In this document: positions 6,746-29,698 of the stretch, in pieces
Position numbering within the stretch: the stretch's first letter is position 1
Layout: every line of letters begins with the position of its first letter
IMG/VR virus record: IMGVR_UViG_3300032770_000001
Coordinates: 186,001 to 250,000 of that record
Direction: 5' to 3' (one strand)
Length of the DNA: 64,000 nt
Program-made: the position numbers and the translations under genes
Notes under the pieces: generated by a model
What the model saw: the letters and a program-made list of their open reading frames with translations, nothing else
What the model was told of the DNA's origin: nothing
Databases searched by the model: none

Positions 6746-9700
6746 TCTTCCGTCCACTCCACCCAGCAATCCCCTACCGGGGTTGTGCCTACCGCGCTGA
6801 GGCGAATACCAGCAAATTCACCTGTACCGCGAAGCACCAATCCTTGCTCGTTGTTGTCTCCGAATTTCCATTCGATTTCACCCGGTTGAACGCTGACCGC
6901 AGCGGTGACAATTTCGAAGCGTTTGGAGTTCAAGATACCCGCTGAAGTCGCCGTTGTTGCTGCCGCCGACCACTGGTTGACCACAGCCGTCTGTGCTGCA
7001 TTGTTGGAGTCCAGTTTCGCAACGTTTGCAGCTTGTGAGTTCGGCGTGCCGCCCGTCAGAGCCGAATAACGAAGCAACTGGATATCGCAAATCGTACCAG
7101 TCGCAGCCGATGCACTGAAGACGATGCGCGTGATGCGGATTGTCTTAGTTGCACTTCCCGTAATAGAGACTGTGGGTGCAGTTGCCGAAGCAATTGGCGT
7201 GAAGGCAACAATACCTACGCGGTAAGTCTGCTTACGACCTTCTTGGTTGACGTACAGACCACCTGTCGAGTCCACCTGAATTGCCACTGTTTGTGCAGCG
7301 GTCGGGGCCGGGATGGTGGTGTTGTACTGACCCAAAATTGCGAGGGCGTTAGTTGGCGCTGTACCTGCCGCGACCGTCCCATCGAGTGTCGCACCCGCGT
7401 TTCCAACGATTCGAGAAGTCCAGTTGCCGGATTGCGCAGCTTGCACGGCGAAGGTTCCGGTGCCAACCACAGTCGCATTCAAGTTCGCAGCAGTTGCCTG
7501 CGAGACAGTGACGGCGTTCGTGATGCTCGTCAACGTGCCGCTGTCGAGCACAGTATGTAGGTTGGTTCCGGTCGCTTGAGCGACTGTAACGGTGCCCGTG
7601 ACGGCAGTTGTGCTGCCGGAGTCTGCGATGACGTGTAGTTGACCCGTGGTACTCGTCAAGAGCGCACGAAGGTTCGTACCATCCGTGCCGCCGATCATCA
7701 ATGCGTTGGCAGGAACCGCAGCGCCCGTGGCTCCATCAACTGCCACACCAGTATGACCTGCGATACCGACCAAAGCCTGACCAGCGGTCCCAGTCGTGGT
7801 GAGTGCTGTTGTGCCGATATAGAGCGAGGCGTTGACAGGCAATGAACCCGCAACTGCACCCGGCCCTGTGCCGAATGTGCCGGATGGAACTGATTGGGTT
7901 CCGACAAAGATTGAAGCATTGACACCCTGTACGCTGCCTGTGGGGGCGGAACCGAAAGTGCTCGGTACTGCCGTGAGTGCTGTACCAGCCACGGAAGTAT
8001 GGTCAGTACGAACTGCACCCACCGTATTGAATGAGAACGTGTTCTGCGTTGCCGTCACGTAGGTTGGGTTGGCGGTCGTGACTTGACCACCGACCTGAAT
8101 CATGTTGGCAGGCTGCGAGCCGCCGATAGCGGCATCGAGCACTGCTCCAGTGTTACCTACGATGCGGGTTGTCCAGTTACCACTCTGGGTGACCGCAGCG
8201 GTGCCCGTGACTGAAATTGGCAGCGGGTTGCTGCTTGATACTCCGACGAGATTCCCACTGGAGTTGAAGCCGACGTAATCGGCATAGCTGGGAACCGGAC
8301 TGCCTGTAGCTCCGTTAGAGGCGGCAGTAAATGTGCCGCTGACGGAATTGACGTTGACTTTAAGAATACCGTTAACGTCGGTCTGGAGAGGCACCATTGT
8401 GCCATCCGTATAGGTCGGCGGGGTGAGGTTGTATTCTGCTCCGATTGCCGTACCGATGCCGGGGAATGCTGAACCAAAGTTCGAGGATGTACCGCCGCTC
8501 GCACCCGTTGCAACGATCTTTAGGTTGCCGTTAACGTCGAACTGGAATGGCCCTGTCTGACCGTTGGTAAATGTTGGAGCAACGGTATTGTAGACACCAC
8601 CGACAATCGATGTGCTTGCAGGAGCCGTACCCGGCGTCGTGCCAGTCATGTCGGAAGCGTCTTTCGTATTGAAGGTGCCCGTCCCAGCGTTTGCCGTCAC
8701 AGTTCCGATGGCGTTTGAGCCTGCCGGAAGTGGCGTGTTCGGGCTGAGAGCAACGACCAAAGATGTGTCGGTTGTTTGTGCTGCTGTGGATACATCCTTG
8801 ACCGTGGCTTTGCGCCAATAGTATTGCCCATCCGAGATAGCTTGGTTATTGCGAGCCGTGTCACCGAGTCCGCAACCATCGACATGCAACTCTCCGGATG
8901 TGCCATTGGAGATGTTGATCGCGGTCATGTGCATCGTGCGATTGTTCGGCCCGAATGTCGCATTCGGTAAACTGGCTACGATGTTTTCCGCACGGTCGAT
9001 AGCCCAGAACGCGGTTCCCACATTCCACCACAAGTAGTAGATGTGGACATTCCCATCCATAGGCTGTACGTTAGTGCCGGAGGGAGAAAGGTCTGCAATT
9101 TGACTACGTGTAGTGCTGGTGCCGCTGTTACCGGAATACAAGACAGCGTACAGGTTACCGTCGATACCGATTTCCCAACCGATACCATCGAGAACAGGCG
9201 TTGTCAGCGTCGGTGTCGCGAGCGTGTTGCCCAGACCCCAGAAACGATAGCTGTTAGTGGTGATCGGGTTATCCAGCACAACCCCCCACGTCATGCGCAA
9301 ATGCGTTGGAGACAGGAGTGGGAAGAGTGCTTGACTTTGCAATAAGCTGTAACCATTGACGGTTGTTCCCGGTACAAGGCTGGTAAAGCGGATATCAATG
9401 CCGCCCGATGTCGGATTGCTGCCCCCACTGCCGGAGCCTACATTCCAACGGTTTGTGGTATCAAGCCCATTGCCGAAGAAGTCACTGAACAGTTGGCTAG
9501 CTTCTTGAGTAATGTTGAGTGCATTGAATGGAGAAACAGTTGCCGCAACGTCGTTAGTGCGGTACGGTCCGCTGAGTGAGAACGGCATCGGCTCATCGAA
9601 CGAATTGGTGACTTCAAGACGATCTACATCGTTGAACCAAATCCAATCAATCGATATGGTCGTGCTTCCGGATGGGATGCCCGTATTTTGAATGTAAGCA

Positions 9701-12081
9701 ACCGGGCTCATCTCCGTGTAAGGTGCAGGTAAATCGACAGAATTTGTGGCTACTACCGTATCGTCAATGGACAATTCAGCACGGTTGCCCGAAAGCCCAA
9801 TGCGGTACTTATGGTCACCGAGAAAATTTGCTCCTCCATCGAAGTTAAATGGGGTGGACTCGATCTCCGTGCCGTTAGCCGTTGTGATGAAATTACCAAC
9901 AGTCGGATCGGTTCCGGAGAATTGAATAACGGCCTGCTCCATTGCGCTCGAACCGAATTGATCTTGCAACCCAAACGTAATAATCTGATTGGCGATGGCT
10001 TGATCGATGTTCAAATAGAACTCAATCACTAACGGTAGATAGTCGGCAAGACCCGCGACGATACCCGTGGTTGCTCCGGAGGAAACGCCGGAAGAAATGT
10101 TGACGCTGGAAGTAGAGACAGTGATGCTGCCGCCCGAACCTGTCTGTGAAGCGAATAGACCCGCGACAGCGGTTGAAGGTGCTGTCGTACCCTGATATGG
10201 TGAGGCTAGCGTTAGCTGGGTATCGCTGATGACTTTAGCAACGACAACATAGTCGCTTTCCGGATCGGCGGATTTTTTGATCCAATAACCAATTTGGACT
10301 TCACTGGTAAAAGCTGTGCCGGAACCCGTAATGTTAGTGCTGCTATTGGTGAAGTTCACCGTTCCGGTCAACGTGGCGACGAGACTAGACCCATTGAAAT
10401 GGTCACGGAATGAACCCTCATCTGTGAAAACTGCCCCGCGAACAGCAAACTGACCTGCTGCGTCCACGACGGGTGGTACGATTTGACCAGTAGAATACTG
10501 AGCGCCCAGATTCGGGAAGAATCCACTTATCTGTGGCGTCTGTTCTGTGACAGTACCACTCACCACCCAAGGCGATGTTCCTTGGGTCGTCGTTACTGTT
10601 CCACTTACGGGAAGAGGAGTTTGATCGCTTGCAACGGTGACTGGCACAGAGGCAGACATTGTGGTCTGACCAAGGGCGATAGGAGTTCCGCCAATCTGCG
10701 CGATGTTCGTGCTCGCGTTATTGGGTGGGTTGACGGAAACTGCACCCCCAGCGGTGACTTTGACCGCTACATAGGAACTGCCGCCAGCCGTGTTGTGTCC
10801 GTAGAGTACCGACTGTGTGATCTGCGCGGTATCCGTGTCTTCCGGTGCCTGACCGAGGAAGTTGCGATTGATCTGTACAGCAATAGATTGCAGAATAGTC
10901 TGCACGCGGAACGCAGTTTGTGGCGTAGCTCCGTTCGTGTAGACGATTCTGAAGTATTGCGCTTGGCGTCCGAACGGTACGGAAATGGCATCGCCAGCGG
11001 AAACCGACACGCTGCTGATAATGTCCCAGTTCGTGCCATCTTCGGAGAACTGGAATTGAAGCCCGTTGACAGCCGAATCTTGATCGCTAAAAACTGATGT
11101 ACGAATGGAAGTGTACGGCAAGATATTCGTTGCTGTACCTGTGAACACCCCACCAGCACCGAGCGGGGTAGTAGTAGAATTGTTCGAGTCAACAACGCCG
11201 TCAGCCCCCACATCACCGCTGTCAACAATGACATGCTGCGGCGTAGCGAAAGCGACTGTCGGGGTGTTTTGAACGAGAACTTTAAGTTGTCCGGTACTGT
11301 CGGTACTGAACACGCGGAGGTTCGTACCGTCGCTTCCGCCTACTTGTAGAGCATTGACCGGAGCAAGCGAGCCGGGGGTTCCATTGGAAATGTCCTCCGT
11401 GGTGAACGTGCCTGTTCCGGCATTCGCTGTAATCGTACCGCTGACCACCCATGGGCTGGTGCTTTGGGTAACAGCCACAGTCGCCGGAAGCGCATCGACA
11501 GTGACATGAAGATTGGATGGGTCAAGCTGGAAAACCTCACTGATATTATTTGCCTGACCAGCTTCGAGAGTGATGGTTGCCGTGCCCGTCCAAGGTGCGG
11601 ACGTGCTGACGCGGAACATGTTCAACCCGCCAGCGTTGATCGCCCATTGACCGTTGGTGGTTGTGTTTGTGACTGCTGAACCTGTGGCGGGGAATCGCGG
11701 AAGAACGTAGGCCGGACTCCAGTTTGTGCCATCGACCGAAGCCTCAAAATTCAGGGTTCCAGTCCATGTGCCAACGACATTAAACAGAATCGTTCCCGCA
11801 CCTTGACCACTAATTGCGACATTCGATGGGCTGGCAGTGATGGTGCCTGTGACAATGCGGTCAGCGGAGGGGGCAGAAGATACAACTACGGGATGCGCAA
11901 TTGTGCCAATGACATTTGACCCATCCCACATCTGAAACTTGGCGGTGCCGTTCGTCAGGGTGGAATCCGAGGCAGGAGACACCACAGCACCAGTGATGTC
12001 GTATAGAGTAACGTGCGCTGCTTTGCTAATCGGATCAATTGTTAATTGATCTGTCGAATTGCCCGATTTAATTATTGCCAT
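6742..12081 (-). CDS. very long fibre-like virion protein (1779 aa)
   Basis: T/S/A/G-rich; FEASVDGTNW and FQFSEDGTNW modules; TGTVNFTNSSTNITGSGTAF tail-fibre-like segment; repeats shared with 3473-6298. Confidence 0.75.
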   Translation of the reverse strand: MAIIKSGNSTDQLTIDPISKAAHVTLYDITGAVVSPASDSTLTNGTAKFQMWDGSNVIGTIAHPVVVSSAPSADRIVTGTITASPSNVAISGQGAGTILFNVVGTWTGTLNFEASVDGTNWSPAYVLPRFPATGSAVTNTTTNGQWAINAGGLNMFRVSTSAPWTGTATITLEAGQANNISEVFQLDPSNLHVTVDALPATVAVTQSTSPWVVSGTITANAGTGTFTTEDISNGTPGSLAPVNALQVGGSDGTNLRVFSTDSTGQLKVLVQNTPTVAFATPQHVIVDSGDVGADGVVDSNNSTTTPLGAGGVFTGTATNILPYTSIRTSVFSDQDSAVNGLQFQFSEDGTNWDIISSVSVSAGDAISVPFGRQAQYFRIVYTNGATPQTAFRVQTILQSIAVQINRNFLGQAPEDTDTAQITQSVLYGHNTAGGSSYVAVKVTAGGAVSVNPPNNASTNIAQIGGTPIALGQTTMSASVPVTVASDQTPLPVSGTVTTTQGTSPWVVSGTVTEQTPQISGFFPNLGAQYSTGQIVPPVVDAAGQFAVRGAVFTDEGSFRDHFNGSSLVATLTGTVNFTNSSTNITGSGTAFTSEVQIGYWIKKSADPESDYVVVAKVISDTQLTLASPYQGTTAPSTAVAGLFASQTGSGGSITVSTSSVNISSGVSSGATTGIVAGLADYLPLVIEFYLNIDQAIANQIITFGLQDQFGSSAMEQAVIQFSGTDPTVGNFITTANGTEIESTPFNFDGGANFLGDHKYRIGLSGNRAELSIDDTVVATNSVDLPAPYTEMSPVAYIQNTGIPSGSTTISIDWIWFNDVDRLEVTNSFDEPMPFSLSGPYRTNDVAATVSPFNALNITQEASQLFSDFFGNGLDTTNRWNVGSGSGGSNPTSGGIDIRFTSLVPGTTVNGYSLLQSQALFPLLSPTHLRMTWGVVLDNPITTNSYRFWGLGNTLATPTLTTPVLDGIGWEIGIDGNLYAVLYSGNSGTSTTRSQIADLSPSGTNVQPMDGNVHIYYLWWNVGTAFWAIDRAENIVASLPNATFGPNNRTMHMTAINISNGTSGELHVDGCGLGDTARNNQAISDGQYYWRKATVKDVSTAAQTTDTSLVVALSPNTPLPAGSNAIGTVTANAGTGTFNTKDASDMTGTTPGTAPASTSIVGGVYNTVAPTFTNGQTGPFQFDVNGNLKIVATGASGGTSSNFGSAFPGIGTAIGAEYNLTPPTYTDGTMVPLQTDVNGILKVNVNSVSGTFTAASNGATGSPVPSYADYVGFNSSGNLVGVSSSNPLPISVTGTAAVTQSGNWTTRIVGNTGAVLDAAIGGSQPANMIQVGGQVTTANPTYVTATQNTFSFNTVGAVRTDHTSVAGTALTAVPSTFGSAPTGSVQGVNASIFVGTQSVPSGTFGTGPGAVAGSLPVNASLYIGTTALTTTGTAGQALVGIAGHTGVAVDGATGAAVPANALMIGGTDGTNLRALLTSTTGQLHVIADSGSTTAVTGTVTVAQATGTNLHTVLDSGTLTSITNAVTVSQATAANLNATVVGTGTFAVQAAQSGNWTSRIVGNAGATLDGTVAAGTAPTNALAILGQYNTTIPAPTAAQTVAIQVDSTGGLYVNQEGRKQTYRVGIVAFTPIASATAPTVSITGSATKTIRITRIVFSASAATGTICDIQLLRYSALTGGTPNSQAANVAKLDSNNAAQTAVVNQWSAAATTATSAGILNSKRFEIVTAAVSVQPGEIEWKFGDNNEQGLVLRGTGEFAGIRLSAVGTTPVGDCWVEWTEE

Positions 12082-18238: not shown

Positions 18239-18535
18239 ATGCCTGTTGCGACGAAGACCCTCCCCCTTACCTCAGAACTTCTCAAGCTAACCGAGAAGCC
18301 CTATGAGGAGTTCAACGCAGTGCTGGAAACAGTCCGCACCCGCTTTCCGCTGGATGTCCAGTACGAGACATTCAACAAAGTGCTTTCCGAGGAACTGGTG
18401 AATAACCCGCTCCGGCGTGCGACCCGTATTGCCATTCGTGTAGCAATGGGCGAGAACGTGGACCGTGAACTCAAGCCTTTCAAGTCCTCGCCGCCGTTTG
18501 GAGAAAAGAAAAAGAAGAAAAAATTCAAAAAATAG
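18239..18535 (+). CDS. hypothetical protein with Lys-rich tail
   Basis: GAGGAG RBS; tail is encoded by an A-tract just upstream of the next promoter. Confidence 0.6.
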   Translation: MPVATKTLPLTSELLKLTEKPYEEFNAVLETVRTRFPLDVQYETFNKVLSEELVNNPLRRATRIAIRVAMGENVDRELKPFKSSPPFGEKKKKKKFKK

Positions 18536-18564
18536 TTGACAAACATTTTGAACTACGGTATTGG
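18536..18564 (+). promoter_or_regulatory. promoter of the structured-RNA/TerD-domain unit
   Basis: Perfect TTGACA, 17-nt spacer, then TATTGG (within the recurrent GGTATT motif); A-rich UP-like tract upstream; the -10 match is weak. Confidence 0.65.
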
Positions 18565-18631
18565 TATAGCAGAGAGATTAACGGAGCGCCCTCTTGGTCG
18601 GGGGCTTTCCACTTAAAAAGTTTTGAAGTTC

Positions 18632-18726
18632 GGGTCGGCCATATCAGCCGTTCCTTCTACATTCACTCGGACAAAGAACCCGGAGAATCTCGGCTCCGGG
18701 AAAATACGTCTGGTGATTTCCGACCC
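18632..18726 (+). ncRNA. conserved stem-loop RNA element, copy 1
   Basis: GGGTCGG/CCGACCC outer helix, CCAT/GATTT internal loop, ATCAG/CTGGT helix, TTCCTTCTAC loop, inserted hairpin 18679-18700. Confidence 0.75.
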
Positions 18727-18943
18727 AAAAATGGCCGGGGGAATCGAGAGCCCCCGGTCGAAAAGATTGTGATTGTCAGTACGACTAGCAACCGAACTGA
18801 CCCGGCCTACGGCGGTCCGCGAGGAACCGTGGGGAAATTTTGAAATAGAGCACCCAAAGCGGTCGGGTCTCGTGGGTAGCGGATGGGCAACCAAGCCGCA
18901 CAGAATCCCACCCCCGGAAACGGGGCATTGATTTTTGAAAAGC

Positions 18944-19014
18944 TTGGACGGCCATATCAGCCCTTCCTTCTACTTGACCTTTACTCAAAAATAGGTCTGA
19001 TGCTTTCCGTCCAA
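18944..19014 (+). ncRNA. conserved stem-loop RNA element, copy 2
   Basis: TTGGACGG/CCGTCCAA outer helix, CCAT/GCTTT internal loop, ATCAG/CTGAT helix, TTCCTTCTAC loop. Confidence 0.75.
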
Positions 19015-19035
19015 TTAGTTTGAAAGGATACGCCA

Positions 19036-21258
19036 ATGAGCAACAATTCGATTCTGATCCGTCGTGCAAACAAGTTCCTCGTCGAGGACAAGGGCACCAA
19101 GACCCGTGTATCCAACGCGGCTCTGGCTGCATTCAACAAGAACCTTCAGGACTTGGGTTACACCTTGTCCGCGAAGGCGATTCGCACTCTCCAGAAGCCG
19201 GGTGTGTCTGCCCCGTTCTCCGAGATCGTGGATGTCCTCAAGGAACTCCGTGGCGTCCGCAACTATCGTCCGATGTATCCGAACTTCCCGACTCAGGTCT
19301 TGGAAGCGGACGAAGCAGAGTTGTATCTGAACGCCATCTTCCACTATTTTTCTTTCGTGGTCGCCGACGCTGTGAATGATTCCAGCGTGATTTGGCTGCC
19401 GAAGTACAAGAAGGATCGTCGTGAGCCGCTGGACGAGAAGGTGCAGTTGACCGTTCTCGAAATCGGCACCGAGGACGATCTGGCAGCGATTGCGGCCCGT
19501 ATCGCGATGTCGAACACGTCCATCTCCGCGACGGACAAGGAAGACCTCCGTTCGCTCATCAAGGATGGCTACCTGCACATCGGTGCGGGTCAGGGCAAGG
19601 TCGGTAAGATTCCGAACAAGGAAAATCTCGCGGTCGTGGGTGCAGTCCTGCTGACCGAGAAGATGTCCTTCGGGTTGATTTCTGAGCAGTTCAAGACTGC
19701 CACGGATGTTCTCCGTCTCGCGACGGCGCTCTCCGATGGCGACGTGTCTCTGGCGGCTGACACCAAGTTCAAGTCGCTGCCGCGCTATATCCGCCGTGTT
19801 CTGGTTTCGATTTTGGAAGCTGCGGAGAACCGCGAAGAGGACATGCTGCGTCACGAGAATCGCTGGGTGAAGCTTGGACACTCGCTGCACATGGGCGAGT
19901 TTTACAAGCGTTTCCCGTTCTCCTACGAAGCGATGCTCAAGCTGCGCAACAAGAGCGCAATGCAGAAGGACCCGATCCGCACCTTTGGTGCGAAGGTTGA
20001 GATGGCACTTCGCGAGGGTGAAGTCCGCAAGGCGATCACCCTGTTGGCGAAGCGTCCGGGTGAGTTTGCCCGTCGTCTCGATCACCTGATGCGTCTCGAT
20101 GAAGATCGTGCTGAGGCGACCGTGGATGCATTCGAGAAGGTCGCGGATGACGTGTCCACGCCTGTGTTGTTGCAGGTGATGGCACACTTCAAGGCGCGTA
20201 ATACGTCCTCCATGCGTGTGGCGATGCCGAAGGGCTCTATCGCTAAGGTGCAGGTACTTCCTCCTACGACTTGGAAGCTGGACTATGTCCAGTGCCAGCG
20301 TGTTGCCGAAGTGTGCACCAAGGCATTGACGGCCCGTTTCTCCAAGCTGGCTCCGCTCGGCAAGGTATATGTGGACGAGAAGTTGCAGAACTACCTCGTT
20401 CCGTTCTCGCAGCGTTCCGCCAACAAGAGTCTGCGCACGATTGTGCGCGGTTCGCAGATCGATCTGGCGAAGGACAAGGACACGATCCGCTTCTTCATCT
20501 GGTGGAAGAACATCGACGACCCGGATACGAAGGCAGCGGGTTGGAGCGGCGACGGTCGCGTAGACCTCGACCTGTCCGCAGTCATCTTTGATGAGAACTG
20601 GAAGAGCCTGACCGACATCGCGTGGTACAATCTGCGTGCCGACAGCGGCTACAGCCACTTCCGCAGCTTCAAGGCGTGTCACAGCGGTGATATCACGAAC
20701 GCTCCGAAGGGTGCGTCCGAGTTCATCGACATCGATATTCCGGGTGCGGTTGCCTACGGTGCGCGTTACGTCGTAATGGACGTGCGCTGCTACACGGGGC
20801 AGAACCTCAATACCATTCCAGAGTGCTCGGCAGGCTGGATGCTTCGTGAGAAGCCGAAGTCTGGTGAAGTGTATGAGCCGAAGACTGTTGTGGACCGTAT
20901 TGACGTTGCGTCCGAAGCTACGTCGGTCATGCCTCTGGTGATCGATCTGGTTGAGCGCAAGGTCATCTGGATGGACATCGTGTCCACGAACCGTCGTGCA
21001 TACAACACGGCAGCGGGTAACCGCGAACAGGTCGCATTGCTGGCGGATGCTTTCACCAAGATTCGCAAGCCGAACCTGTACGAATTGCTCTCTGCGCACG
21101 CGAACGGGCGCGGTAAGCAGGTGTTCGATCCGGCGAAGGCGGATGTTGTATTCTCCGTTGAGTCCGGTATCCAGTTCGAACTGGACAAGATCGCTTCTGA
21201 GTACATGCTGAACGAAGCCCCGGCAAAGCCGAAGGCGAAGGCTGCCAAGAAGCGTTAA
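19036..21258 (+). CDS. large helical protein with C-terminal TerD-like domain (possible Ro60/TROVE-like N-terminus)
   Basis: AAGGA RBS; C-terminal DLDLSA, HSGDIT, SEFIDID, RYVVMDV fit TerD; N-terminal ~450 aa looks helical (TATDVLRLA...DGDVSLA); strongly biased codons. Confidence 0.7.
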   Translation: MSNNSILIRRANKFLVEDKGTKTRVSNAALAAFNKNLQDLGYTLSAKAIRTLQKPGVSAPFSEIVDVLKELRGVRNYRPMYPNFPTQVLEADEAELYLNAIFHYFSFVVADAVNDSSVIWLPKYKKDRREPLDEKVQLTVLEIGTEDDLAAIAARIAMSNTSISATDKEDLRSLIKDGYLHIGAGQGKVGKIPNKENLAVVGAVLLTEKMSFGLISEQFKTATDVLRLATALSDGDVSLAADTKFKSLPRYIRRVLVSILEAAENREEDMLRHENRWVKLGHSLHMGEFYKRFPFSYEAMLKLRNKSAMQKDPIRTFGAKVEMALREGEVRKAITLLAKRPGEFARRLDHLMRLDEDRAEATVDAFEKVADDVSTPVLLQVMAHFKARNTSSMRVAMPKGSIAKVQVLPPTTWKLDYVQCQRVAEVCTKALTARFSKLAPLGKVYVDEKLQNYLVPFSQRSANKSLRTIVRGSQIDLAKDKDTIRFFIWWKNIDDPDTKAAGWSGDGRVDLDLSAVIFDENWKSLTDIAWYNLRADSGYSHFRSFKACHSGDITNAPKGASEFIDIDIPGAVAYGARYVVMDVRCYTGQNLNTIPECSAGWMLREKPKSGEVYEPKTVVDRIDVASEATSVMPLVIDLVERKVIWMDIVSTNRRAYNTAAGNREQVALLADAFTKIRKPNLYELLSAHANGRGKQVFDPAKADVVFSVESGIQFELDKIASEYMLNEAPAKPKAKAAKKR

Positions 21259-21274: not shown

Positions 21275-21307
21275 AGGGCTCCCCCAAAATGGGAGCCCTT
21301 TCTATTT
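21275..21307 (+). terminator. rho-independent terminator
   Basis: AGGGCTCCC-7nt-GGGAGCCCT followed by TTCTATTT. Confidence 0.85.
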
Positions 21308-21333
21308 GCAAAAAACCTTTCCAGTAGTATTAT
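21306..21333 (+). promoter_or_regulatory. sigma70-like promoter, AGTATT class (leaderless)
   Basis: TTGCAA-16nt-TATTAT; ATG at 21341. Confidence 0.55.
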
Positions 21334-21524: not shown

Positions 21525-21788
21525 ATGGAACCGTGGGAAATCGATCCAGATGATCTTCGCAAGATGGCGCTCATTGAGCGATTCACGCTCGGCGACATCA
21601 AAGAAGTCCTCAACCGTGAGGACATGGTCGGTACAGCCCCTCGAATCTATGAACTGCTGGAGCGATTCAGTAAGTCCCTTGACGGCGAGTACAACAACGG
21701 TGAGATCATCTCGTTCGGTCTAGCTCTCATCTCAGCCCAAATGCTGCTGATGTATGAGCACTTCGAGAAGGGCAATGAGACTTCTTAA
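21525..21788 (+). CDS. hypothetical protein
   Basis: Contiguous + strand chain. Confidence 0.6.
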   Translation: MEPWEIDPDDLRKMALIERFTLGDIKEVLNREDMVGTAPRIYELLERFSKSLDGEYNNGEIISFGLALISAQMLLMYEHFEKGNETS

Positions 21789-22353
21789 GCTGGGTTTCAC
21801 GGGCACTAAAGACGGGATGAGCATAGAGCAGAAGCGGCTCTTGGAAGAGCACTTCACCGCCCTGCTTGAGGGCTACGACTGGATTGAATTTCACCACGGT
21901 GATTGTATCGGCGCTGACGCTCAAGCCGCCATCATGTTGCGCGTCCTCAGCAACAAATTGCGGATGATGGAACAGGCAACCTGTCAAGTCACCATCATCG
22001 CCCATCCCGGTTATCCAGTACGAAACCCCAAAGATACTCGCTGGCGTGCATTCACCGCCGAGATCAATGACGAGATTCGAGAGGCGAAGCCATTCATCGC
22101 TCGTGACCACGACATCGTGGATGAAACCACGGATTTAGTCGCTACACCGCTGACTCGCGAAGAGCAGGTGTCGTCCGGCACATGGACAACAGTGCGTTAC
22201 GCACGGAAGAAAAAGAAAAAGATCACAATCATCAACCCGGCTGAGCGCAAGTTTGATCCACATTCTCTTCCGAAAGGGACGAACGCCATCGCCGGACAAC
22301 AGAGGTATTACGGGCCGACATATATGCAGCGAGGTTATCGCGAAGATGAGTGA
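21775..22353 (+). CDS. SLOG-superfamily (YspA/DUF2493-like) protein
   Basis: LGFTGT, HHGDCIGAD, RDHDIV, SGTWTTVRYA. Confidence 0.75.
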   Translation: MRLLKLGFTGTKDGMSIEQKRLLEEHFTALLEGYDWIEFHHGDCIGADAQAAIMLRVLSNKLRMMEQATCQVTIIAHPGYPVRNPKDTRWRAFTAEINDEIREAKPFIARDHDIVDETTDLVATPLTREEQVSSGTWTTVRYARKKKKKITIINPAERKFDPHSLPKGTNAIAGQQRYYGPTYMQRGYREDE

Positions 22354-24736: not shown

Positions 24737-25183
24737 ATGCCTGACAAAATTACGTACCGTGGCGTCCGCAATGTTGAGGGAGACGTGTATCGCTGCTTCG
24801 TTCACCGCGAAGACAATGTCTCATCGGTCGATTACGAACTCGATCCTCGTAACGACATCTACGACCACAGCCCAACAGGGATCGCGTGGGGCTACGGCGG
24901 CAGCGGTCCGGCTCAGCTTGCGTTGGGCATTCTCGCTGACTATTTCAGTCCGGACGGCAAGAGGGTGCGTTACACCCGCCGCAACGAGTGGGACATGGAT
25001 GGTCGCGACGACCCGAATCAGAAAGCCCTCAAGCATTATCAGGAATTTAAGTGGGCAATCGTGGCGCTATTCCCAATGGATGGCGAGTGGGAGTTGCCCG
25101 GTGAGATAATTGAGAAGTTCGTCACGGGAACGCTGACGGACGAAGAGAGACGCGAGTTTCTCAAGGGTCAAGTGAATGCCTGA
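24737..25183 (+). CDS. DUF6166-like protein
   Basis: HSPTGIAWGYGGSGPAQLALGILAD signature; AGGAG RBS. Confidence 0.7.
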   Translation: MPDKITYRGVRNVEGDVYRCFVHREDNVSSVDYELDPRNDIYDHSPTGIAWGYGGSGPAQLALGILADYFSPDGKRVRYTRRNEWDMDGRDDPNQKALKHYQEFKWAIVALFPMDGEWELPGEIIEKFVTGTLTDEERREFLKGQVNA

Positions 25184-25739
25184 GACCTTACAACTGGTGT
25201 ATTGGGACAACCCGGTTCTTTCGACCGTATGCACTCCCGTCGCCGACAGTGCTTTCGGCGCTGATAAGCTGCGAGACTTTGCCGCCCGGTTGCTGGCGAC
25301 GATGGATGCCAAGAACGGCGTCGGGCTGGCGGCTCCGCAGGTCGCGGTGACTGAGCGGATGTTTGCCATGCATTTCCCGAATAGTGAGCAGGATCGGGAG
25401 CCGTGGAAGCCGATTGTGGTCATCAATCCGACCTTGGAACTGAACGGGGGTACTGTGGCGGCACGTGAAGGCTGCTTGAGTCTGCCGGGGGTGTTTGAAC
25501 AGGTTGCACGGGCTGAGAACGTGGTCATGCGCTATCGGGATGCGGACGGTGACGAATTGGTGCGGGAATTGACCGAAATCGACGCTAGAGTAGCTCAACA
25601 CGAGTTTGACCACCTGAACGGGATCATGTTCTTTGACTATTTGAATATCCGCCCGACTTACGGTCGTCGGATGTCTAAACAGGTCTCGAAACAGGTCATG
25701 CGGATGTGGGAGAAAGAACGCTCTCGACGTGGGCTGTAA
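25176..25739 (+). CDS. def: peptide deformylase
   Basis: All three motifs: GVGLAAPQV, EGCLS, QHEFDHLNG. Confidence 0.95.
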   Translation: MPETLQLVYWDNPVLSTVCTPVADSAFGADKLRDFAARLLATMDAKNGVGLAAPQVAVTERMFAMHFPNSEQDREPWKPIVVINPTLELNGGTVAAREGCLSLPGVFEQVARAENVVMRYRDADGDELVRELTEIDARVAQHEFDHLNGIMFFDYLNIRPTYGRRMSKQVSKQVMRMWEKERSRRGL

Positions 25740-25759
25740 TCTAGGGTAAGATCGGGTTC

Positions 25760-25978
25760 ATGAACAGATCAAAGGCTATAACCGCAGCGGACAATGCGAG
25801 AGCGATTTTCCAATGTTTTGCCAATGCCGTTAATGACAACGCTCTGGTAAAACCGGGGATCGGTCATGCGATCCGGGACTACGAGGATCGGTTCAAGGTG
25901 GAGTTCAATAAATTGCTCGATGCAGTCGATCTCGATAAAGATCAGATCGGCTTCCAGCGAGTGGAGTATCCGAAATGA
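25760..25978 (+). CDS. hypothetical protein
   Basis: Follows a TCGACG-17nt-TAAGAT promoter-like site; probably leaderless. Confidence 0.6.
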   Translation: MNRSKAITAADNARAIFQCFANAVNDNALVKPGIGHAIRDYEDRFKVEFNKLLDAVDLDKDQIGFQRVEYPK

Positions 25979-26160
25979 TGAATGACCGTGGGGTAGTTAA
26001 TGAACCTTCGTTTGTTCTTTTCCCCGGCGACACTGTCAGCATTGTGGTCGATACTAAGACCTATCGTGGCACGCTGATGAACGACAATGGTCGTTGGTAC
26101 GTGAAAGTGCTCGGTGCCGACCCCGGTGAAGAGAAAGAAGTGGTCATCGTTAAGCTATGA
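25975..26160 (+). CDS. hypothetical protein
   Basis: ATGA overlap, GGAG RBS. Confidence 0.55.
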   Translation: MMNDRGVVNEPSFVLFPGDTVSIVVDTKTYRGTLMNDNGRWYVKVLGADPGEEKEVVIVKL

Positions 26161-26432
26161 GAAGTGGAAAAGTCATCCACGTCTGGATTACAAAGTACGC
26201 TTTAACTCAGGGCATTTTTGAAATCGATGCCGAAGAGTGCGTGACCTCAACTGGCGAATGTCAGAACATGATCCAGAAAGTTGGTGGAGCGTATTCCGAT
26301 TATTATCATGGCGAGGGCCGGGAGTGGCATCGTACTGAAGCCGCCGCCAAAGAACATGCGAACAAGATGGTGCGAGACAAGATCGCGAGTCTGAAAAAGA
26401 GTATCGCGAAATTTGAAAAACTGGTGTTCTGA
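26157..26432 (+). CDS. hypothetical protein
   Basis: ATGA overlap; VWITKYALTQGI start typical of small phage proteins. Confidence 0.65.
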   Translation: MRSGKVIHVWITKYALTQGIFEIDAEECVTSTGECQNMIQKVGGAYSDYYHGEGREWHRTEAAAKEHANKMVRDKIASLKKSIAKFEKLVF

Positions 26433-26620
26433 TGACACGAGGAGAGAAAGTTCAATTCGCAACTGATCTCGAACTTATGCATGAACGCCCCATGCGTCTC
26501 GGTCTTTATGCAACCGGGCAGCGTATCCACAATGCGATTCGCATGGTGGGGTTTGAAATCGCCGACGACATCACAGGTTGCATCGCATACGAGGAAGCTT
26601 TAGCGGCAGCGGAGAAGTAA
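26432..26620 (+). CDS. hypothetical protein
   Basis: TGATG and TAATG overlaps. Confidence 0.55.
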   Translation: MTRGEKVQFATDLELMHERPMRLGLYATGQRIHNAIRMVGFEIADDITGCIAYEEALAAAEK

Positions 26621-27762
26621 TGGCAAACCGAGAATACAGAGAAGAGCGTTACGACTACACCGGAGGGCGTGAGCACGCCCCGGAGTTGATCGTTGCAGTC
26701 GGCATCTCCGGCTCAGGGAAATCCACGGAGATCACGCAGATGGTGAAACGGTCACAGGGTAAGACCGTCCGCTTGAACCGTGACGACATGCGCAAGATGC
26801 TTTTCTGCGGAGCCGATTGGAACAAGCGGAACGAGGATTACGTCCGCAAGGCTCAGATGGAAGCTGCACGCATCGCGCTCCAGATGGGCAAGAACGTGGT
26901 GATCGACGACACCAACTGCATCCGGCAGACCCGGCAGAAGTGGGAAGAGTTGGCGGTCGATCTGCACACGCACCTGCGCTTCCTGATCTGGCAAGTGGAC
27001 TTAAAGGTCGCTGTAGAGCGAGATGCACTTCGCGGCGTAATCTGCGAAGCCTGTAAGCGTCCTATGGGCGCAATGGTGGGCGAAGAGATCATTCGCCGCC
27101 AAGCAAAGGATTTGGGACAGTTCAGCATGAGTCACGAAGTCAAGGCAGCGACGTTGACCCGCCCCTATTGGGAGCGGCAACAGCTTCTCAAGGGAGGCTT
27201 CATCCCCCGTCTGCCCGGACGCCCGTGGATTCTGTACGATCTGGACGGTACAGTAGCGAAGCGTGGCGACCGTGGTCGGTTCGAGGAGCACAAGGTCATC
27301 CTCGATACCTACTATGACACCGTCGTGCAATGGATTCGTGCATTGCAGCCGTTCTACAACTTGGCAGCCGTCTCCGGACGGCAGGATTTCTGCGGTGATG
27401 ACACCTGCGATTGGTTGCAGGCTGGTGACGTTCCGTTTGACCGCATCATCATGCGGTACACGCGGGATAACCGCCCTGACTATCAGGTGAAGGAAGAAAT
27501 CCTGAAAGAGTTGCAGGCTGTTGTCGGTCAGTCCGTGGGTTACTTCGACTCGAACGAAGAGTTTCGCGTTCCTGACGAGGGAATCGCGTTCGTAATCGAC
27601 GACCGTCCGCAGGTAGTCAAGATGTGGCGGTCGCACGGCTTGACGGTGTTCCCGGTTCGGGGTGTGGATAAGCATACCAAGGACTGCACGGAGCAGCACA
27701 AGGACAAGCCGTGGTACAAGGACGGCTACTGCGCTGAATGCGGAGCGGTCGAGGACTTCTGA
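26620..27762 (+). CDS. pseT: polynucleotide 5'-kinase/3'-phosphatase (T4 PseT-like Pnkp)
   Basis: P-loop GISGSGKST, RDD, DDTN; HAD domain DLDGT, SGR, K, IDDRPQV; start re-called at TAATG overlap. Confidence 0.92.
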   Translation: MANREYREERYDYTGGREHAPELIVAVGISGSGKSTEITQMVKRSQGKTVRLNRDDMRKMLFCGADWNKRNEDYVRKAQMEAARIALQMGKNVVIDDTNCIRQTRQKWEELAVDLHTHLRFLIWQVDLKVAVERDALRGVICEACKRPMGAMVGEEIIRRQAKDLGQFSMSHEVKAATLTRPYWERQQLLKGGFIPRLPGRPWILYDLDGTVAKRGDRGRFEEHKVILDTYYDTVVQWIRALQPFYNLAAVSGRQDFCGDDTCDWLQAGDVPFDRIIMRYTRDNRPDYQVKEEILKELQAVVGQSVGYFDSNEEFRVPDEGIAFVIDDRPQVVKMWRSHGLTVFPVRGVDKHTKDCTEQHKDKPWYKDGYCAECGAVEDF

Positions 27763-27926
27763 TGCTGCTCGACAGTTTTAGAGGTACGGTCGAGCAGGGC
27801 TGTCCGCTGTGTCGTTGGTTTGGCATTGTCCGGGCGTTTCCAGCACATTGGAGATCGCACAGTGTGCTGGAGCGCATGGTTTATCGCTTACGCAAGCTAC
27901 GGAGGCTTCGATGGGTCGCCAAATAA
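27762..27926 (+). CDS. small hypothetical protein
   Basis: TGATG overlap, GAGG RBS, CPLC. Confidence 0.45.
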   Translation: MLLDSFRGTVEQGCPLCRWFGIVRAFPAHWRSHSVLERMVYRLRKLRRLRWVAK

Positions 27927-28198
27927 TCAAACAGCCAAACGGTCTGTTCGCCCTCTGGTCGTCCAATTCGGACAAGTTTGTCTGGATCGACGCCACGAAG
28001 CAGGAGATGATTGACGCTTTCGCTGAGGAGGCTCGAAAAGAAGCAGTCGAGCGAACCGAGGAGATTTTTGCCGAACTGGAAGCCGGGGGAAGCCCCTACT
28101 ATCAGTGGACTCAGACGTATGAAGAGGCCGTCGCCTACTACGAACGTGTCCATGGGAAAAAATTCAATCCGGAAGAAGTAGGAACAGACGATGAGTGA
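27911..28198 (+). CDS. hypothetical protein
   Basis: Start re-called behind GGAGG: MGRQIIKQPNGLFALWSS. Confidence 0.65.
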   Translation: MGRQIIKQPNGLFALWSSNSDKFVWIDATKQEMIDAFAEEARKEAVERTEEIFAELEAGGSPYYQWTQTYEEAVAYYERVHGKKFNPEEVGTDDE

Positions 28199-28466
28199 AC
28201 CGAATTTAGTCGATGCATACACGTTCCGACTGTGCGGCAAGGAATTGGAAACCTTCCTTGCGTGGGAAGAAGAGCACAACAAGACTTGCAAATATTACGA
28301 TGACGGCACGTCCCCGGTCTGCCCGTCAGGGGCGATTGGTGGGCAGATGCAGTTCTGCTTTACCAACACCGGATTGGGGACCATTGTCGTAGTCGAGTGT
28401 TTGTGTTATACCAATGATGGTGACGAACGAGGCAAAAAGAACGTCACCGACTTTGATAGCTGGTAG
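28191..28466 (+). CDS. small putative metal-binding protein (paralog of 56525-56767)
   Basis: W...H...C, F..TGLG, CLC, TDFDSW. Confidence 0.65.
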   Translation: MSEPNLVDAYTFRLCGKELETFLAWEEEHNKTCKYYDDGTSPVCPSGAIGGQMQFCFTNTGLGTIVVVECLCYTNDGDERGKKNVTDFDSW

Positions 28467-28473
28467 GTAAACT

Positions 28474-28779
28474 ATGGAAACACAGTTGTCCCCCGAAGTT
28501 GCAGTCTCGCAGCCGTCCCCCGATGATGTTGTGGTAACAGTCAGTGAGCAGGAAGAACAAGACCTGCGTTCACGTTTTACGACGTTCATCTCTTCGAACC
28601 CGACCGCCAAACGCCGCAGTGCTTTCTTAGCGGTGCGTTTCCCGTACACCGGGAAGGGTGGTTACGCAAAGCGCCGTGTTGTCCTCGATATGCTGGTTGC
28701 CGAGGGTCAGGTGCCGGAAGTGTTCGGGAGTCCTGAACTTCGCAAGCAACTTAAACAGAATGGACAAAATTCTCGATAA
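28474..28779 (+). CDS. hypothetical protein
   Basis: AGGT RBS, chain. Confidence 0.55.
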   Translation: METQLSPEVAVSQPSPDDVVVTVSEQEEQDLRSRFTTFISSNPTAKRRSAFLAVRFPYTGKGGYAKRRVVLDMLVAEGQVPEVFGSPELRKQLKQNGQNSR

Positions 28780-29146
28780 AGCTGGCGCGACCGCTTCGCT
28801 GATTTGTGCCGTGCACTGTATCAGCCTGCCGTTACTGTTCGCGGTGATCCCGGCAATAGGGCTCACGTGGCTGGATAATGTCTGGTTTGATCGAGTGTTT
28901 CTGGCGGCAGCCGTGGTGTTTGTGATTCTTGCTCATCCACGTGGGTATATAAGACACCGTCGTTGCATTCCAGCGGTGCTGGCACTCATCGGTATTGCTA
29001 CTGTGGTGTTGGCGATCTCGCTGTGGGAACAATCGGAAGCGCACCATTATCTGGTTGCATTGGGCGGCTTAACAATCGCTTCATCGCATTGGCTTAATCG
29101 GCATTTCCTGCATCACGCTTGTTGCGAGGGACATCATGGCAGATGA
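28760..29146 (+). CDS. MerC-domain membrane protein
   Basis: DKAGATASLICAVHC..LP N-terminal signature; 4 hydrophobic segments; GY.RHRR; His/Cys tail. Confidence 0.8.
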   Translation: MDKILDKAGATASLICAVHCISLPLLFAVIPAIGLTWLDNVWFDRVFLAAAVVFVILAHPRGYIRHRRCIPAVLALIGIATVVLAISLWEQSEAHHYLVALGGLTIASSHWLNRHFLHHACCEGHHGR

Positions 29147-29438
29147 GTATTATGTGCTTTCGTTGAAATGGTCGGTCGGTTCCGACTACGTCGTGTTTTG
29201 GGGACCGAATGACGGCGGCTATTTCACCAATCTTGCCGAAGCAGGACGATATTCGCAGGAGCAGATTGACGCACATCGTAGCTACTACGACAACGGCCAT
29301 ACCACCCTCGCGGTGCCATGTAGCGAGATTGACGCATTGGCATGGCGGACTGTTTTCGCTGATCGCCTGCACGACACGATTTTGAAGAATCATGGCGTGG
29401 ACTGGATGAAGGTGCTTGAAGAGCGGAGATGCGGATGA
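29136..29438 (+). CDS. hypothetical protein
   Basis: GAGGG RBS; FWGPNDGGY...AGRY motif. Confidence 0.65.
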   Translation: MADEYYVLSLKWSVGSDYVVFWGPNDGGYFTNLAEAGRYSQEQIDAHRSYYDNGHTTLAVPCSEIDALAWRTVFADRLHDTILKNHGVDWMKVLEERRCG

Positions 29439-29698
29439 GTGAAGTTACACTAACCTGCTCCCATACGATGGGGTTGGAGCGGGGGGATTTTATCACTGTC
29501 TCCGGGTTTGCAAACATAGCCAACAACGGCTCGTTCATCGTTCGCCGTGTTCGTGGCTTTGGGTTGATCGTGCAGCCAGCTTCGTTCTGGGATTATGTCC
29601 GGCACTATGCTCGACGGGTTATGACGTGGGCAAAGTGGTATTACTATGGAATATCCGACTTTGCCAACGAGTTGAGAGACTCGTGGATGGACGAATAG
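29435..29698 (+). CDS. hypothetical protein with FCCH-like beta module
   Basis: VTLT...GLERGDFITVSG...NNGSFIV. Confidence 0.55.
   Translation: MSEVTLTCSHTMGLERGDFITVSGFANIANNGSFIVRRVRGFGLIVQPASFWDYVRHYARRVMTWAKWYYYGISDFANELRDSWMDE

What the first reader, a model, noticed from the sequence alone, without database searches (positions are those of the whole stretch)
18632..19014. Two covarying copies of an unassigned stem-loop RNA directly upstream of a large TerD-domain gene: candidate phage ribonucleoprotein
Seen: copies at 18632-18726 and 18944-19014 share CGGCCATATCAGCC[GC]TTCCTTCTAC (24 of 25 nt) and AAAATA[CG]GTCTG[GA]TG[AC]TTTCCG. Their outer helices differ in sequence yet both pair fully (GGGTCGG/CCGACCC versus TTGGACGG/CCGTCCAA). 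The inner helix swaps a U-G for a U-A pair, and the loop tolerates an inserted hairpin. This is the pattern of selection on RNA structure. Promoter (18536), RNAs, 740-aa gene and terminator (21275) form one closed unit. Established: Y RNAs have paired ends, an interrupted helix bound by Ro60/TROVE proteins and a pyrimidine-rich loop, and in bacteria are encoded beside Ro60. Inference: these are Y-RNA-like partners of the downstream protein, though the canonical Ro-binding sequence is absent. Alternative: autoregulatory binding sites, since the loop TCCTT can pair with the gene's AAGGA RBS (19024-19028).
Basis: partly seen in the sequence, partly recalled or inferred. Interest (0 to 1): 0.88.

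Follow-up and report, generated by a model that had tools for sequence, protein, structure and literature searches.

The report
Conserved small RNA partnered with TerD protein
The two stem-loops are real copies of a widespread, undescribed small structured RNA that in phages and bacteria almost always sits beside, and on the same strand as, one uncharacterised 700-residue TerD-domain protein, which points to a new RNA-protein particle resembling the Ro60/Y RNA system.

Summary
Both copies exist as described (18632-18726, 18944-19014, + strand) and are the only two in the window. They belong to a large RNA family absent from Rfam 15. Its layout is closing helix P1, a CUA/UUU internal loop, helices P2 and P3, and a large loop opening with an almost invariant UUCCUUCUA. 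Covariation is overwhelming: 93-97% of cells paired against about 60% in shuffles.

Linkage to the 740-aa protein family is almost obligate. Starting from the protein, 77 of 79 metagenomic loci carry the RNA. Starting from the RNA, 166 of 190 validated loci carry the protein, and most of the rest are cut short. Of 418 copies, 417 lie on the gene's strand. About a quarter lie downstream of the gene, and some have their own promoter or terminator, so this is more than an mRNA leader.

The protein is a helical domain with no structural match, followed by a TerD beta-sandwich. It is not Ro60/TROVE. A few relatives of the RNA carry a YrlA-type tRNA-like module. The loci sit among tRNA genes and RNA-repair genes (RtcB, Pnkp-Hen1, Thg1-like; in this window Pnkp, Rnl1, a CCA enzyme and Band-7).

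Best reading: a Ro60/Y-RNA-like particle built on an unrelated protein. Binding and function are untested.

The parts
18537..18577 (+). Promoter-like region: TTGACA (18537-18542), then TGGTATAGC and CAGAGAGA. The TGGTAT...CAGAGAGA block is shared with the orthologous position in the related megaphage locus L014.
   Evidence: Sequence. It did not pass the sigma-70 consensus scan because of a weak -10. That it functions as a promoter is inference.
18632..18726 (+). RNA copy 1 (95 nt). P1 is 18632-18638 paired with 18720-18726. The conserved loop core UUCCUUCUA is at 18651-18659. The variable loop holds an inserted hairpin at 18679-18700.
   Evidence: Fold z -3.28. R1 scores 80 bits and R2 scores 51 bits, E 4e-10. 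The orthologous copy 1 in L014 also carries an inserted hairpin.
18727..18943 (+). Spacer between the copies, 217 nt, non-coding and G+C-rich, with hairpins. It contains a terminator-like hairpin CCCCGGAAACGGGG followed by CATTGATTTT at 18912-18935. The spacer is not conserved in L014, where it is about 100 nt.
18944..19014 (+). RNA copy 2 (71 nt, the minimal form). P1 is 18944-18951 paired with 19007-19014. The loop core UUCCUUCUA is at 18964-18972.
   Evidence: Fold z -3.34. R1 scores 90 bits and R2 scores 69.9 bits, E 8.5e-15.
19024..19028 (+). Shine-Dalgarno-like AAGGA, 7 nt before the ATG at 19036.
   Evidence: The closest homologous locus, L014, has no counterpart.
19036..21258 (+). Gene for the 740-aa partner protein. 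It has an N-terminal alpha-helical domain (about residues 1-440) with no structural match, a linker with the invariant PFSQRSA motif, a TerD-fold beta-sandwich (about residues 480-650, nt 20473-20985), and a small C-terminal domain.
   Evidence: PHROG 33734, E 2.5e-88. NCBIfam NF041916 at 413 bits, below its cutoff of 600. More than 4340 homologues. AlphaFold2 model with pLDDT 83. Foldseek matches TerD structures. The N-terminal domain alone has no PDB match better than E 0.05.
21275..21309 (+). Intrinsic terminator closing the unit: a 9-bp stem with 7 G-C pairs, followed by TTCTATTT.

Best explanation
The two elements are paralogous genes for a conserved structured small RNA of about 70-100 nt. 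This RNA is the dedicated partner of the TerD-domain protein encoded just downstream.

The RNA has two parts. The first is a conserved protein-recognition scaffold. The 5' and 3' ends pair to form P1, ending in two invariant G-C pairs. A conserved 3x4 internal loop (CUA opposite UUU) follows, then the covarying helices P2 and P3. The large loop opens with UUCCUUCUA and closes with AAAnUAG. The second part is a variable module inside that loop. It can be nothing, a simple hairpin, or in some relatives a tRNA-like T arm, closed acceptor stem and D arm.

In this phage the RNAs are transcribed with the gene from the promoter region near 18537. They are probably cut out of the leader, or partly terminated at 18912-18935.

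I infer that the protein binds the scaffold to form a stable ribonucleoprotein. I further infer that this particle acts like Ro60/Y RNA, as an RNA-tethered platform for surveillance or repair of tRNA and other stable RNA, during phage infection or under stress in bacteria.

Shown here: the RNA family, its structure, and its near-obligate same-strand linkage to the protein. Inferred: physical binding, processing, and the role in RNA repair or quality control.
For: Structure: 7 of 16 pairs already covary among four copies. On 92-115 distinct sequences, 93.2%, 96.7% and 94.1% of cells pair, against 60-64% in shuffles and 37-52% when partners are slid, with 482-655 double-change cells.

Linkage, starting from the protein: 77 of 79 metagenomic homologue loci (39-56% identity) carry the RNA within 2 kb. 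All 127 copies are on the gene's strand, 98 upstream and 29 downstream. Both negative loci are cut off at the gene's 3' end.

Linkage, starting from the RNA: 68 of 81 viral loci and 98 of 109 bacterial loci hold the protein. 290 of 291 copies are on the gene's strand, and most negatives lie at the ends of stored stretches.

No other protein is conserved across the loci.

Stand-alone RNA features: a perfect TTGACA-17-TATAAT promoter lies inside a downstream five-copy array in L093. Pseudomonas, Achromobacter and Gemmata copies have their own intrinsic terminator. Downstream copies use P1 plus a U-run as the mRNA terminator. One copy abuts tRNA-Val in L018.

Y-RNA-like design: relatives carry T, acceptor-stem and D-arm inserts that the Rfam YrlA model hits at 51, 38 and 29 bits.

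RNA-repair and tRNA context: Pnkp-Hen1-Thg1-like genes lie beside the bacterial locus L129. RtcB occurs in 5 loci and Thg1-like in 12. tRNA arrays, a tmRNA and a CCA-adding enzyme occur in phage loci. In this window Pnkp, Rnl1, a CCA-adding enzyme and Band-7 lie 5-15 kb downstream.
Against: No experiment shows transcription, processing or binding. The protein has no recognisable RNA-binding domain, and its N-terminal domain matches nothing solved. TerD domains are known as Ca2+-binding stress proteins, not RNA binders. RNA-repair neighbours occur in only a minority of loci, roughly 10%. The tRNA-like module is rare (4 of 201 distinct copies) and absent from both window copies. A few loci have the RNA with no detectable protein nearby (L147, L194). 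Most bacterial copies lie in the 5' leader, which also fits cis-regulation.
Confidence: 0.6

Rival explanations
1. The element is purely a cis-acting leader, that is, an autoregulatory operator. The protein binds the structured element in its own mRNA to control translation or stability, and the RNA has no role of its own.
For: Most copies lie upstream: 98 of 127 starting from the protein, and 123 of 137 in bacterial genomes. In many bacteria P1 ends 1-11 nt before the start codon with no Shine-Dalgarno sequence in between; 8 of 10 short gaps lack one. In Paenibacillus the GGAGG lies 5' of the last copy, so the RNA fold would bridge it to the ATG.
Against: About a quarter of copies (103 of 418) lie downstream of the gene. 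They include arrays of 4-5 copies with long spacers and an internal consensus promoter. In Pseudomonas, Achromobacter and Gemmata the RNA has its own terminator before the gene. Some copies carry tRNA-like modules, and one abuts a tRNA gene. Several divergent paralogues per locus are not needed for an operator. Autoregulation may well exist alongside a trans role.
Confidence: 0.17
2. The RNA is a decoy or antitoxin-like RNA in phage-host conflict. It would mimic tRNA or the 3' end of 16S rRNA (the pyrimidine loop UUCCUUCUA resembles an anti-Shine-Dalgarno tail). It would either absorb nucleases or keep the TerD protein, acting as an effector, inactive until the RNA is damaged.
For: The arrangement recalls type III toxin-antitoxin loci: tandem RNA copies upstream of a protein gene, with a terminator-like hairpin between RNA and gene. 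The system occurs in jumbo phages and is scattered patchily across bacterial phyla. It lies near anticodon-nuclease countermeasures, Pnkp and Rnl1. Some relatives carry tRNA-like inserts.
Against: PADLOC finds no defence-system match. The protein has no nuclease or toxin domain. The copies are divergent paralogues, not the near-identical short repeats of type III antitoxins. The resemblance to the 16S tail rests on memory and on a pyrimidine-rich 10-mer, so it is weak.
Confidence: 0.1
3. The element is a riboswitch-like sensor, for a metal or a nucleotide-like ligand of the Ter pathway, that controls the TerD-domain gene.
For: It has highly conserved unpaired nucleotides in an internal loop and a large loop, and its usual position is 5' of the gene. 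Ter systems are linked to metal and nucleoside-like signals (PMC7824862).
Against: It has no consistent expression platform. The element can sit before a terminator, abut the ATG, follow the stop codon or occur in arrays. The variable loop accepts inserts of 16-87 nt. It is linked to one protein family only, not to a regulon.
Confidence: 0.04
4. The RNA acts in trans as a base-pairing regulator. Its invariant UUCCUUCUA loop would pair with purine-rich sequences (GAAGGAA, Shine-Dalgarno-like) in mRNAs, including the partner's own ribosome-binding site.
For: The loop is single-stranded, invariant and complementary to AAGGA at 19024-19028.
Against: The nearest relative L014 has no Shine-Dalgarno sequence at its gene, and many bacterial genes in these loci also lack one. 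Invariance of a 9-mer from Pseudomonas to Paenibacillus to phages fits recognition by a conserved protein better than pairing with varied mRNAs. The pairing idea also does not explain the equally conserved CUA/UUU internal loop.
Confidence: 0.06

Closest known systems
Ro60 (Rsr, TROVE) with Y RNAs, especially bacterial and phage YrlA (Rfam RF02553; Chen et al. 2014, PMC4201824)
   Same: The ncRNA genes lie within a few hundred nt of the protein gene and on the same strand, often as several paralogues. The 5' and 3' ends pair into a closing stem that carries conserved protein-side nucleotides. A variable module in the loop is, in some members, a tRNA-like T arm, closed acceptor stem and D arm. 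The system occurs in bacteria and in phages near tRNA genes, and associates with RtcB-type RNA repair genes.
   Different: The protein is not TROVE plus vWA. It is an unmatched helical domain plus a TerD beta-sandwich. The Ro-binding motif GNCGAAN0-1G / GGUCCGA is absent, replaced by GGCUAU ... UUCCUUCUA ... UAG ... UUUCC. The YrlA model hits only the tRNA-like insert of rare relatives, below its threshold, and never hits the window copies.
TerD-family proteins (PF02342; PDB 3ibz, 2qz7, 2kxt)
   Same: The C-terminal beta-sandwich superposes on TerD structures (E 8e-6, TM 0.70). Acidic positions are conserved (D510, D512, D552, E562, D565).
   Different: Classical TerD proteins are single-domain proteins of about 190 aa, encoded in ter operons with no known RNA partner. 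Here the domain is fused behind a helical region of about 450 aa, and the gene stands apart from any ter operon.
NCBIfam NF041916, MXAN_6230/SCO0854 family RING domain-containing protein
   Same: It is clearly homologous over residues 126-697 (E 1.7e-123).
   Different: The score of 413 bits is below the equivalog cutoff of 600, and the first 166 or so profile positions are not matched. I suppose, but did not check, that those positions hold the RING domain named in the family title. I found no literature on this family.
SPFH/Band-7 module with a tRNA-like RNA, and other RNA-repair scaffolds (Burroughs and Aravind 2016, NAR 44:8525; recalled from memory, since the paper could not be read here)
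   Same: The concept is the same: a non-enzymatic scaffold protein with a cognate ncRNA embedded in RNA-repair gene neighbourhoods. A Band-7 gene lies in the same repair cluster of this window.
   Different: The protein family is different. I could not check whether that paper mentions this TerD-fusion family.
Type III toxin-antitoxin loci (ToxIN-like)
   Same: RNA copies lie in tandem upstream of a protein gene, sometimes separated from it by a terminator.
   Different: The RNAs are long, structured, divergent paralogues rather than short identical repeats. The protein is 700 aa with no endoribonuclease fold, and it has no PADLOC match.

Membership tests
Y RNA / YrlA (RF02553) | Encoded near, and on the same strand as, a Ro60/TROVE gene | tested here: not met
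   The neighbouring gene is the TerD-domain protein. No TROVE hit appeared in Pfam for it or for 35 homologues. No other protein is conserved across the loci.
Y RNA / YrlA (RF02553) | Ro60-binding motif GNCGAAN0-1G (bacteria) or GGUCCGA bulged helix near the 5' end (PMC4201824) | tested here: not met
   Neither window copy contains CGAA at all (sequence). The family consensus at that position is GGCUAU.
Y RNA / YrlA (RF02553) | 5' and 3' ends pair to form the closing stem | tested here: met
   P1 has 7-8 bp in both copies and covaries across the family.
Y RNA / YrlA (RF02553) | tRNA-like domain (T arm, closed acceptor stem, D arm) | tested here: not met
   It is absent from both window copies. 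It is present only in rare relatives: L093 copies 3 and 5, L029 and L016.
Y RNA / YrlA (RF02553) | Score at or above the Rfam gathering threshold (69 bits) | tested here: not met
   The window gives no hit even at E<=10. The best relative scores 51 bits.
Ro60 / TROVE protein | HEAT-repeat ring (TROVE) followed by a vWA domain | tested here: not met
   No Ro60 chain appears among the 50 listed Foldseek matches, whether for the full model or for the N-terminal domain alone. A profile search of PDB sequences finds none.
TerD domain (PF02342) | TerD beta-sandwich fold | tested here: met
   Foldseek gives 3ibz at E 8.2e-6, TM 0.70, probability 1.0, and also 2qz7, 2qng and 9a6r_B. Pfam TerD hits 4 of 35 homologues, though not this sequence.
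NF041916 (MXAN_6230/SCO0854 RING-domain family) | Full-length match at or above the curated cutoff, including the N-terminal part | tested here: not met
   The score is 413.5 bits against a cutoff of 600, and only profile positions 167-758 of 842 are matched.
cis-regulatory 5' leader / riboswitch | Always located in the 5' untranslated region of the regulated gene, with an expression platform | tested here: not met
   29 of 127 copies (protein-first set) and 61 of 154 (viral set) lie downstream of the gene. Some copies have their own promoter or terminator.
Type III toxin-antitoxin | Near-identical short tandem RNA repeats plus a small endoribonuclease toxin | tested here: not met
   The copies differ in helix sequence. 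The protein is 740 aa, has no nuclease domain, and has no PADLOC hit.
New RNA family defined here (TerD-protein-associated RNA) | P1, CUA/UUU internal loop, P2, P3, loop starting UUCCUUCU and ending UAG, then UyUCC; encoded beside and co-oriented with the protein gene | tested here: met
   R2 scores the window copies at 69.9 and 51 bits, E 8.5e-15 and 3.9e-10. The consensus comes from the protein-first set.

The most novel reading that the evidence does not exclude
This would be a previously unrecognised, ancient class of ribonucleoprotein found in many bacterial phyla and in large phages. A TerD-fusion protein and one to six dedicated small RNAs would form a particle that does for tRNA and stable-RNA repair or surveillance what Ro60/Y RNA does, but built from an unrelated protein and an unrelated RNA scaffold. 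The occasional YrlA-type tRNA-like module would show that such modules are exchanged between, or evolved convergently in, independent RNP systems.
Probability: 0.45. Interest if true: 0.9.

Novelty: new variant of a known kind. Interest (0 to 1): 0.86.

Why it matters
Stable bacterial RNPs with a dedicated small RNA are few: the ribosome, RNase P, SRP, tmRNA-SmpB, 6S-RNAP, Ro60-Y RNA and CRISPR complexes. A new one with thousands of protein homologues would be a substantial addition. The homologues span Bacillota, Pseudomonadota, Bacteroidota, Acidobacteriota, Cyanobacteriota, Planctomycetota, Patescibacteria and jumbo phages.

It would assign a first functional context to a large family now annotated only as 'TerD family protein', 'cytoplasmic protein' or 'stress response protein SCP2'. 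It would give the TerD fold an unexpected link to RNA biology. It would also add a component to phage tRNA-maintenance and RNA-repair islands, which bear on anticodon-nuclease defence and counter-defence.

The covariance model can be used at once to annotate a missing RNA gene family in genomes and viromes. Cultured carriers make the hypothesis directly testable. They include Paenibacillus amylolyticus, Brevibacillus, Pseudomonas antarctica, Achromobacter kerstersii, Xanthomonas phage XacN1 and, at weaker model scores, Rhodococcus phage Weasels2 and Lactobacillus phage LpeD.

Tried and rejected
- **Rfam:** gathering and E<=10 scans of the window, and of 10 related loci, found no family at the RNA positions. 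The weak RT-17 and anti-hemB hits (E 3-5) are chance.
- **tRNA search:** ARAGORN found no tRNA or tmRNA in the window.
- **First exact-pattern scan (CCATATCAGCCNTTCCTT):** 11 of the 12 viral hits were chance matches that the covariance model did not confirm.
- **Near-identical DNA in cultured phages:** none.
- **Pfam, PDB sequence and PADLOC searches of the protein:** no TROVE, no nuclease and no defence family.
- **Foldseek on the N-terminal domain alone:** only insignificant matches to generic helical repeats.
- **A conserved third gene:** ORF clustering found none. The apparent second and third clusters look like antisense ORFs inside the main gene, judging from the coordinates of their example members.
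- **Loop pairing with the Shine-Dalgarno sequence as a general mechanism:** rejected.
- **Listeria phage CKA15 ncRNAs and CKA15_055 (PMC12282133):** the protein is 56.8 kDa and matched Rsr by HHpred, so it is a true Ro60-type system, not this family.
- **Steps that failed:** the look-up of the Bacillus sp. OV166 homologue found no record. Burroughs and Aravind 2016 could not be opened.
- **Literature:** eight full-text searches found nothing linking this protein family to an RNA.

Full report
**Observation.** The region 18536-19035 is a 500-nt non-coding gap before a 740-aa ORF (19036-21258, + strand). Both copies are exactly as described, at 18632-18726 and 18944-19014. They share 24 of 25 nt in the 5' block and most of the 3' block. 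Their outer helices differ in sequence yet both pair, one inner pair changes from U-G to U-A, and copy 1 has an extra hairpin at 18679-18700. The 24-nt core occurs twice in the window, against none in shuffles. Both copies fold better than shuffled sequence (z about -3.3). The terminator at 21275 is confirmed. The promoter at 18537 has a perfect -35 but a weak -10. A terminator-like hairpin lies between the copies at 18912-18925. Rfam 15 and ARAGORN find nothing here.

**The RNA is a family.** The window comes from a 455-kb phage contig. The closest relative is a 463-kb contig, L014, whose protein is 56% identical. It has the same two copies in the same places, and copy 1 again carries an inserted hairpin. 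Its helices P1 and P2 are rewritten compensatorily, while the loop CUUCCUUCUAC is kept. A covariance model built from these four copies (R1) found copies next to more distant homologues, both upstream and downstream of the gene.

RNA-only pattern scans followed by model validation gave 81 viral loci and 109 bacterial genome loci. The bacteria include Paenibacillus, Brevibacillus, Bacillus, Pseudomonas, Achromobacter, Gemmata, Acidobacteriota, Bacteroidota, Cyanobacteriota/Melainabacteria, Chloroflexota, Nitrospinota, Armatimonadota and Patescibacteria.

The consensus from the protein-first set, which no pattern biased, reads as follows. P1 ends in two invariant G-C pairs. It is followed by the internal loop CUA opposite (n)UUU, then P2, a 1-nt bulge and P3. 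The loop begins with UUCCUUCU (113 of 115 sequences) and ends with UAG, followed by UyUCC. The variable part of the loop ranges from 16 to 87 nt.

Covariation is decisive. 93.2%, 96.7% and 94.1% of cells are paired, against 60-64% in shuffles and 37-52% when partners are slid. There are 482-655 double-change cells, and no shuffle reached the observed values.

**Linkage to the protein.** I first started from the RNA. 68 of 81 viral loci and 98 of 109 genomic loci contain a homologue of the 740-aa protein within the stored stretch. Most of the remaining loci have the RNA close to the end of the stretch. 290 of 291 copies are on the gene's strand, at a median distance of 71-188 nt.

I then started from the protein, with a profile scan of metagenomes that used no RNA information. 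77 of 79 loci carry the RNA, and all 127 copies are on the gene's strand, 98 upstream and 29 downstream. Both negative loci end at the gene's stop codon.

A broader model, R2, also finds copies beside homologues of 25-36% identity in Xanthomonas phage XacN1 (three copies) and in a gut phage contig (four copies). It finds them more weakly in Rhodococcus phage Weasels2, Lactobacillus phage LpeD and L020. No other protein is conserved across the loci. Only two copies exist in the 64-kb window.

**More than an mRNA leader.** Copies occur immediately after the stop codon, where P1 plus a U-run acts as the terminator. In Pseudomonas, Achromobacter and Gemmata, copies sit upstream but are followed by their own intrinsic terminator. 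Downstream arrays of four or five copies occur with long spacers. L093 has a perfect TTGACA-17-TATAAT promoter inside such an array. In L018 a copy directly abuts a tRNA gene.

There is also evidence for coupling to translation. In many bacteria P1 ends 1-11 nt before the start codon with no Shine-Dalgarno sequence in between. In Paenibacillus a GGAGG lies on the 5' side of the last copy. So a cis effect, or the production of a leaderless mRNA by processing, may coexist with a trans role.

**The protein.** Pfam gives nothing for this sequence. It matches PHROG 33734, of unknown function, and NCBIfam NF041916 below its cutoff. It has more than 4340 homologues, named at most 'TerD family protein', 'cytoplasmic protein' or 'stress response protein SCP2'.

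The AlphaFold2 model (pLDDT 83, pTM 0.82) shows a helical N-terminal region, a beta-sandwich and a small C-terminal domain. Foldseek matches only TerD structures, to the beta-sandwich. The N-terminal domain, modelled alone (pLDDT 85), has no PDB match better than E 0.05. Predicted viral structures match only uncharacterised phage proteins. There is no TROVE, vWA, nuclease or defence signature. Many invariant arginines and lysines and an invariant PFSQRSA linker are compatible with nucleic-acid binding, but that is inference.

**Clues to function.** First, rare long variants carry a T arm, a closed acceptor stem and a D arm in the variable loop. The Rfam YrlA model recognises these at 51, 38 and 29 bits, through that module only. 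This is the design of bacterial Y RNAs (PMC4201824).

Second, in phages the module sits within stable-RNA gene clusters. These include tRNA arrays, a tmRNA and a CCA-adding enzyme next door in RpAliso.

Third, RNA-repair genes recur. A divergent kinase, Thg1-like, Hen1 and Pnkp operon lies beside the Pyrinomonadaceae locus. RtcB occurs in 5 loci and Thg1-like in 12. In this window a T4-type Pnkp, an Rnl1 RNA ligase, a CCA-adding enzyme and an SPFH/Band-7 protein lie 5-15 kb downstream. These neighbours are present in only a minority of loci, so they suggest a functional area rather than prove one.

**Conclusion.** The element is a member of a large, apparently undescribed RNA family that is genetically inseparable from a TerD-fusion protein family. 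It most probably forms a Ro60/Y-RNA-like particle on an unrelated protein.

It is not a member of the Y RNA/YrlA family, because the Ro60 partner, the Ro-binding motif and the Rfam threshold all fail. It is also not a classical leader, riboswitch or type III antitoxin.

My confidence that the RNA family and its linkage are real is about 0.97. For direct protein binding it is about 0.7, and for a role in tRNA or RNA repair and surveillance about 0.45.

Novelty rests on the absence of an Rfam match and on eight full-text searches that found no description. One relevant paper, Burroughs and Aravind 2016, could not be read.

Noticed in passing
window 25176-34466: An RNA-repair and translation-maintenance island lies downstream of the unit: peptide deformylase (25176-25739), a T4-type polynucleotide kinase-phosphatase (26578-27762), a MerC-like membrane protein (28658-29146), an Rnl1-type RNA ligase (29886-31055), a CCA-adding tRNA nucleotidyltransferase (31274-32605) and an SPFH/Band-7 protein (33408-34466).
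   Followed up: partly
window 18239-18535 and L014 about 2340-2660: The 98-aa ORF just upstream of the RNA unit is conserved in the related megaphage (ORF cluster; sequence). It has no Pfam or PHROG match. The block TGGTAT...CAGAGAGA after it is shared by both phages and may be a phage-specific promoter or transcript start.
   Followed up: no
window 21754-22353: The 199-aa ORF after the terminator matches PHROG 289, 'GTP-binding domain' (E 7e-6). Whether it relates to the unit is unknown.
   Followed up: no
window 3473-12081 (- strand): Very large ORFs of 941 and 1779 aa lie on the minus strand. The window contains no tRNA gene at all, although homologous loci in other phages sit inside tRNA arrays.
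   Followed up: no
L093 6205-6846: Five tandem copies lie downstream of the gene, with the variant loop CAUCCUUCUA and 5' GGCU(U)AA. A consensus sigma-70 promoter lies at about 6559-6587 inside the array. Copies 3 and 5 carry YrlA-like tRNA mimics.
   Followed up: partly
L256 (MT835874.1) 710-2114: In this gut phage contig, a tmRNA and four tRNA genes directly precede four copies of the RNA and the protein gene, all on one strand.
   Followed up: partly
L139, L173 (Paenibacillus), about 2060-2170 and 270-400: The Shine-Dalgarno sequence GAGAGGAGG lies 5' of the second RNA copy, and the ATG follows 8-10 nt after P1. This is a split ribosome-binding site that only the folded RNA would bring together.
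   Followed up: partly
L147 3951-4038; L194 1961-2041: These are strong RNA hits (49 and 64 bits) with no detectable TerD-fusion gene within 8 kb. The neighbours are methyltransferases and an RNase T-like exonuclease in L147, and a response regulator and a histidine kinase in L194. They may be orphan copies or assembly artefacts.
   Followed up: partly
L129 1-3421: The Pyrinomonadaceae MAG has a divergent operon of an AAA_33 kinase, Thg1-like, Hen1 and Pnkp, 440 nt from the first RNA copy. A TTACAG-17-TATCTT promoter lies just before that copy.
   Followed up: partly
L133, L144, L160, L173, L180, L191, L194, L197: Hybrid histidine kinase / response-regulator genes recur near the module in eight bacterial loci. 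These genes are so common that this may be coincidence.
   Followed up: no
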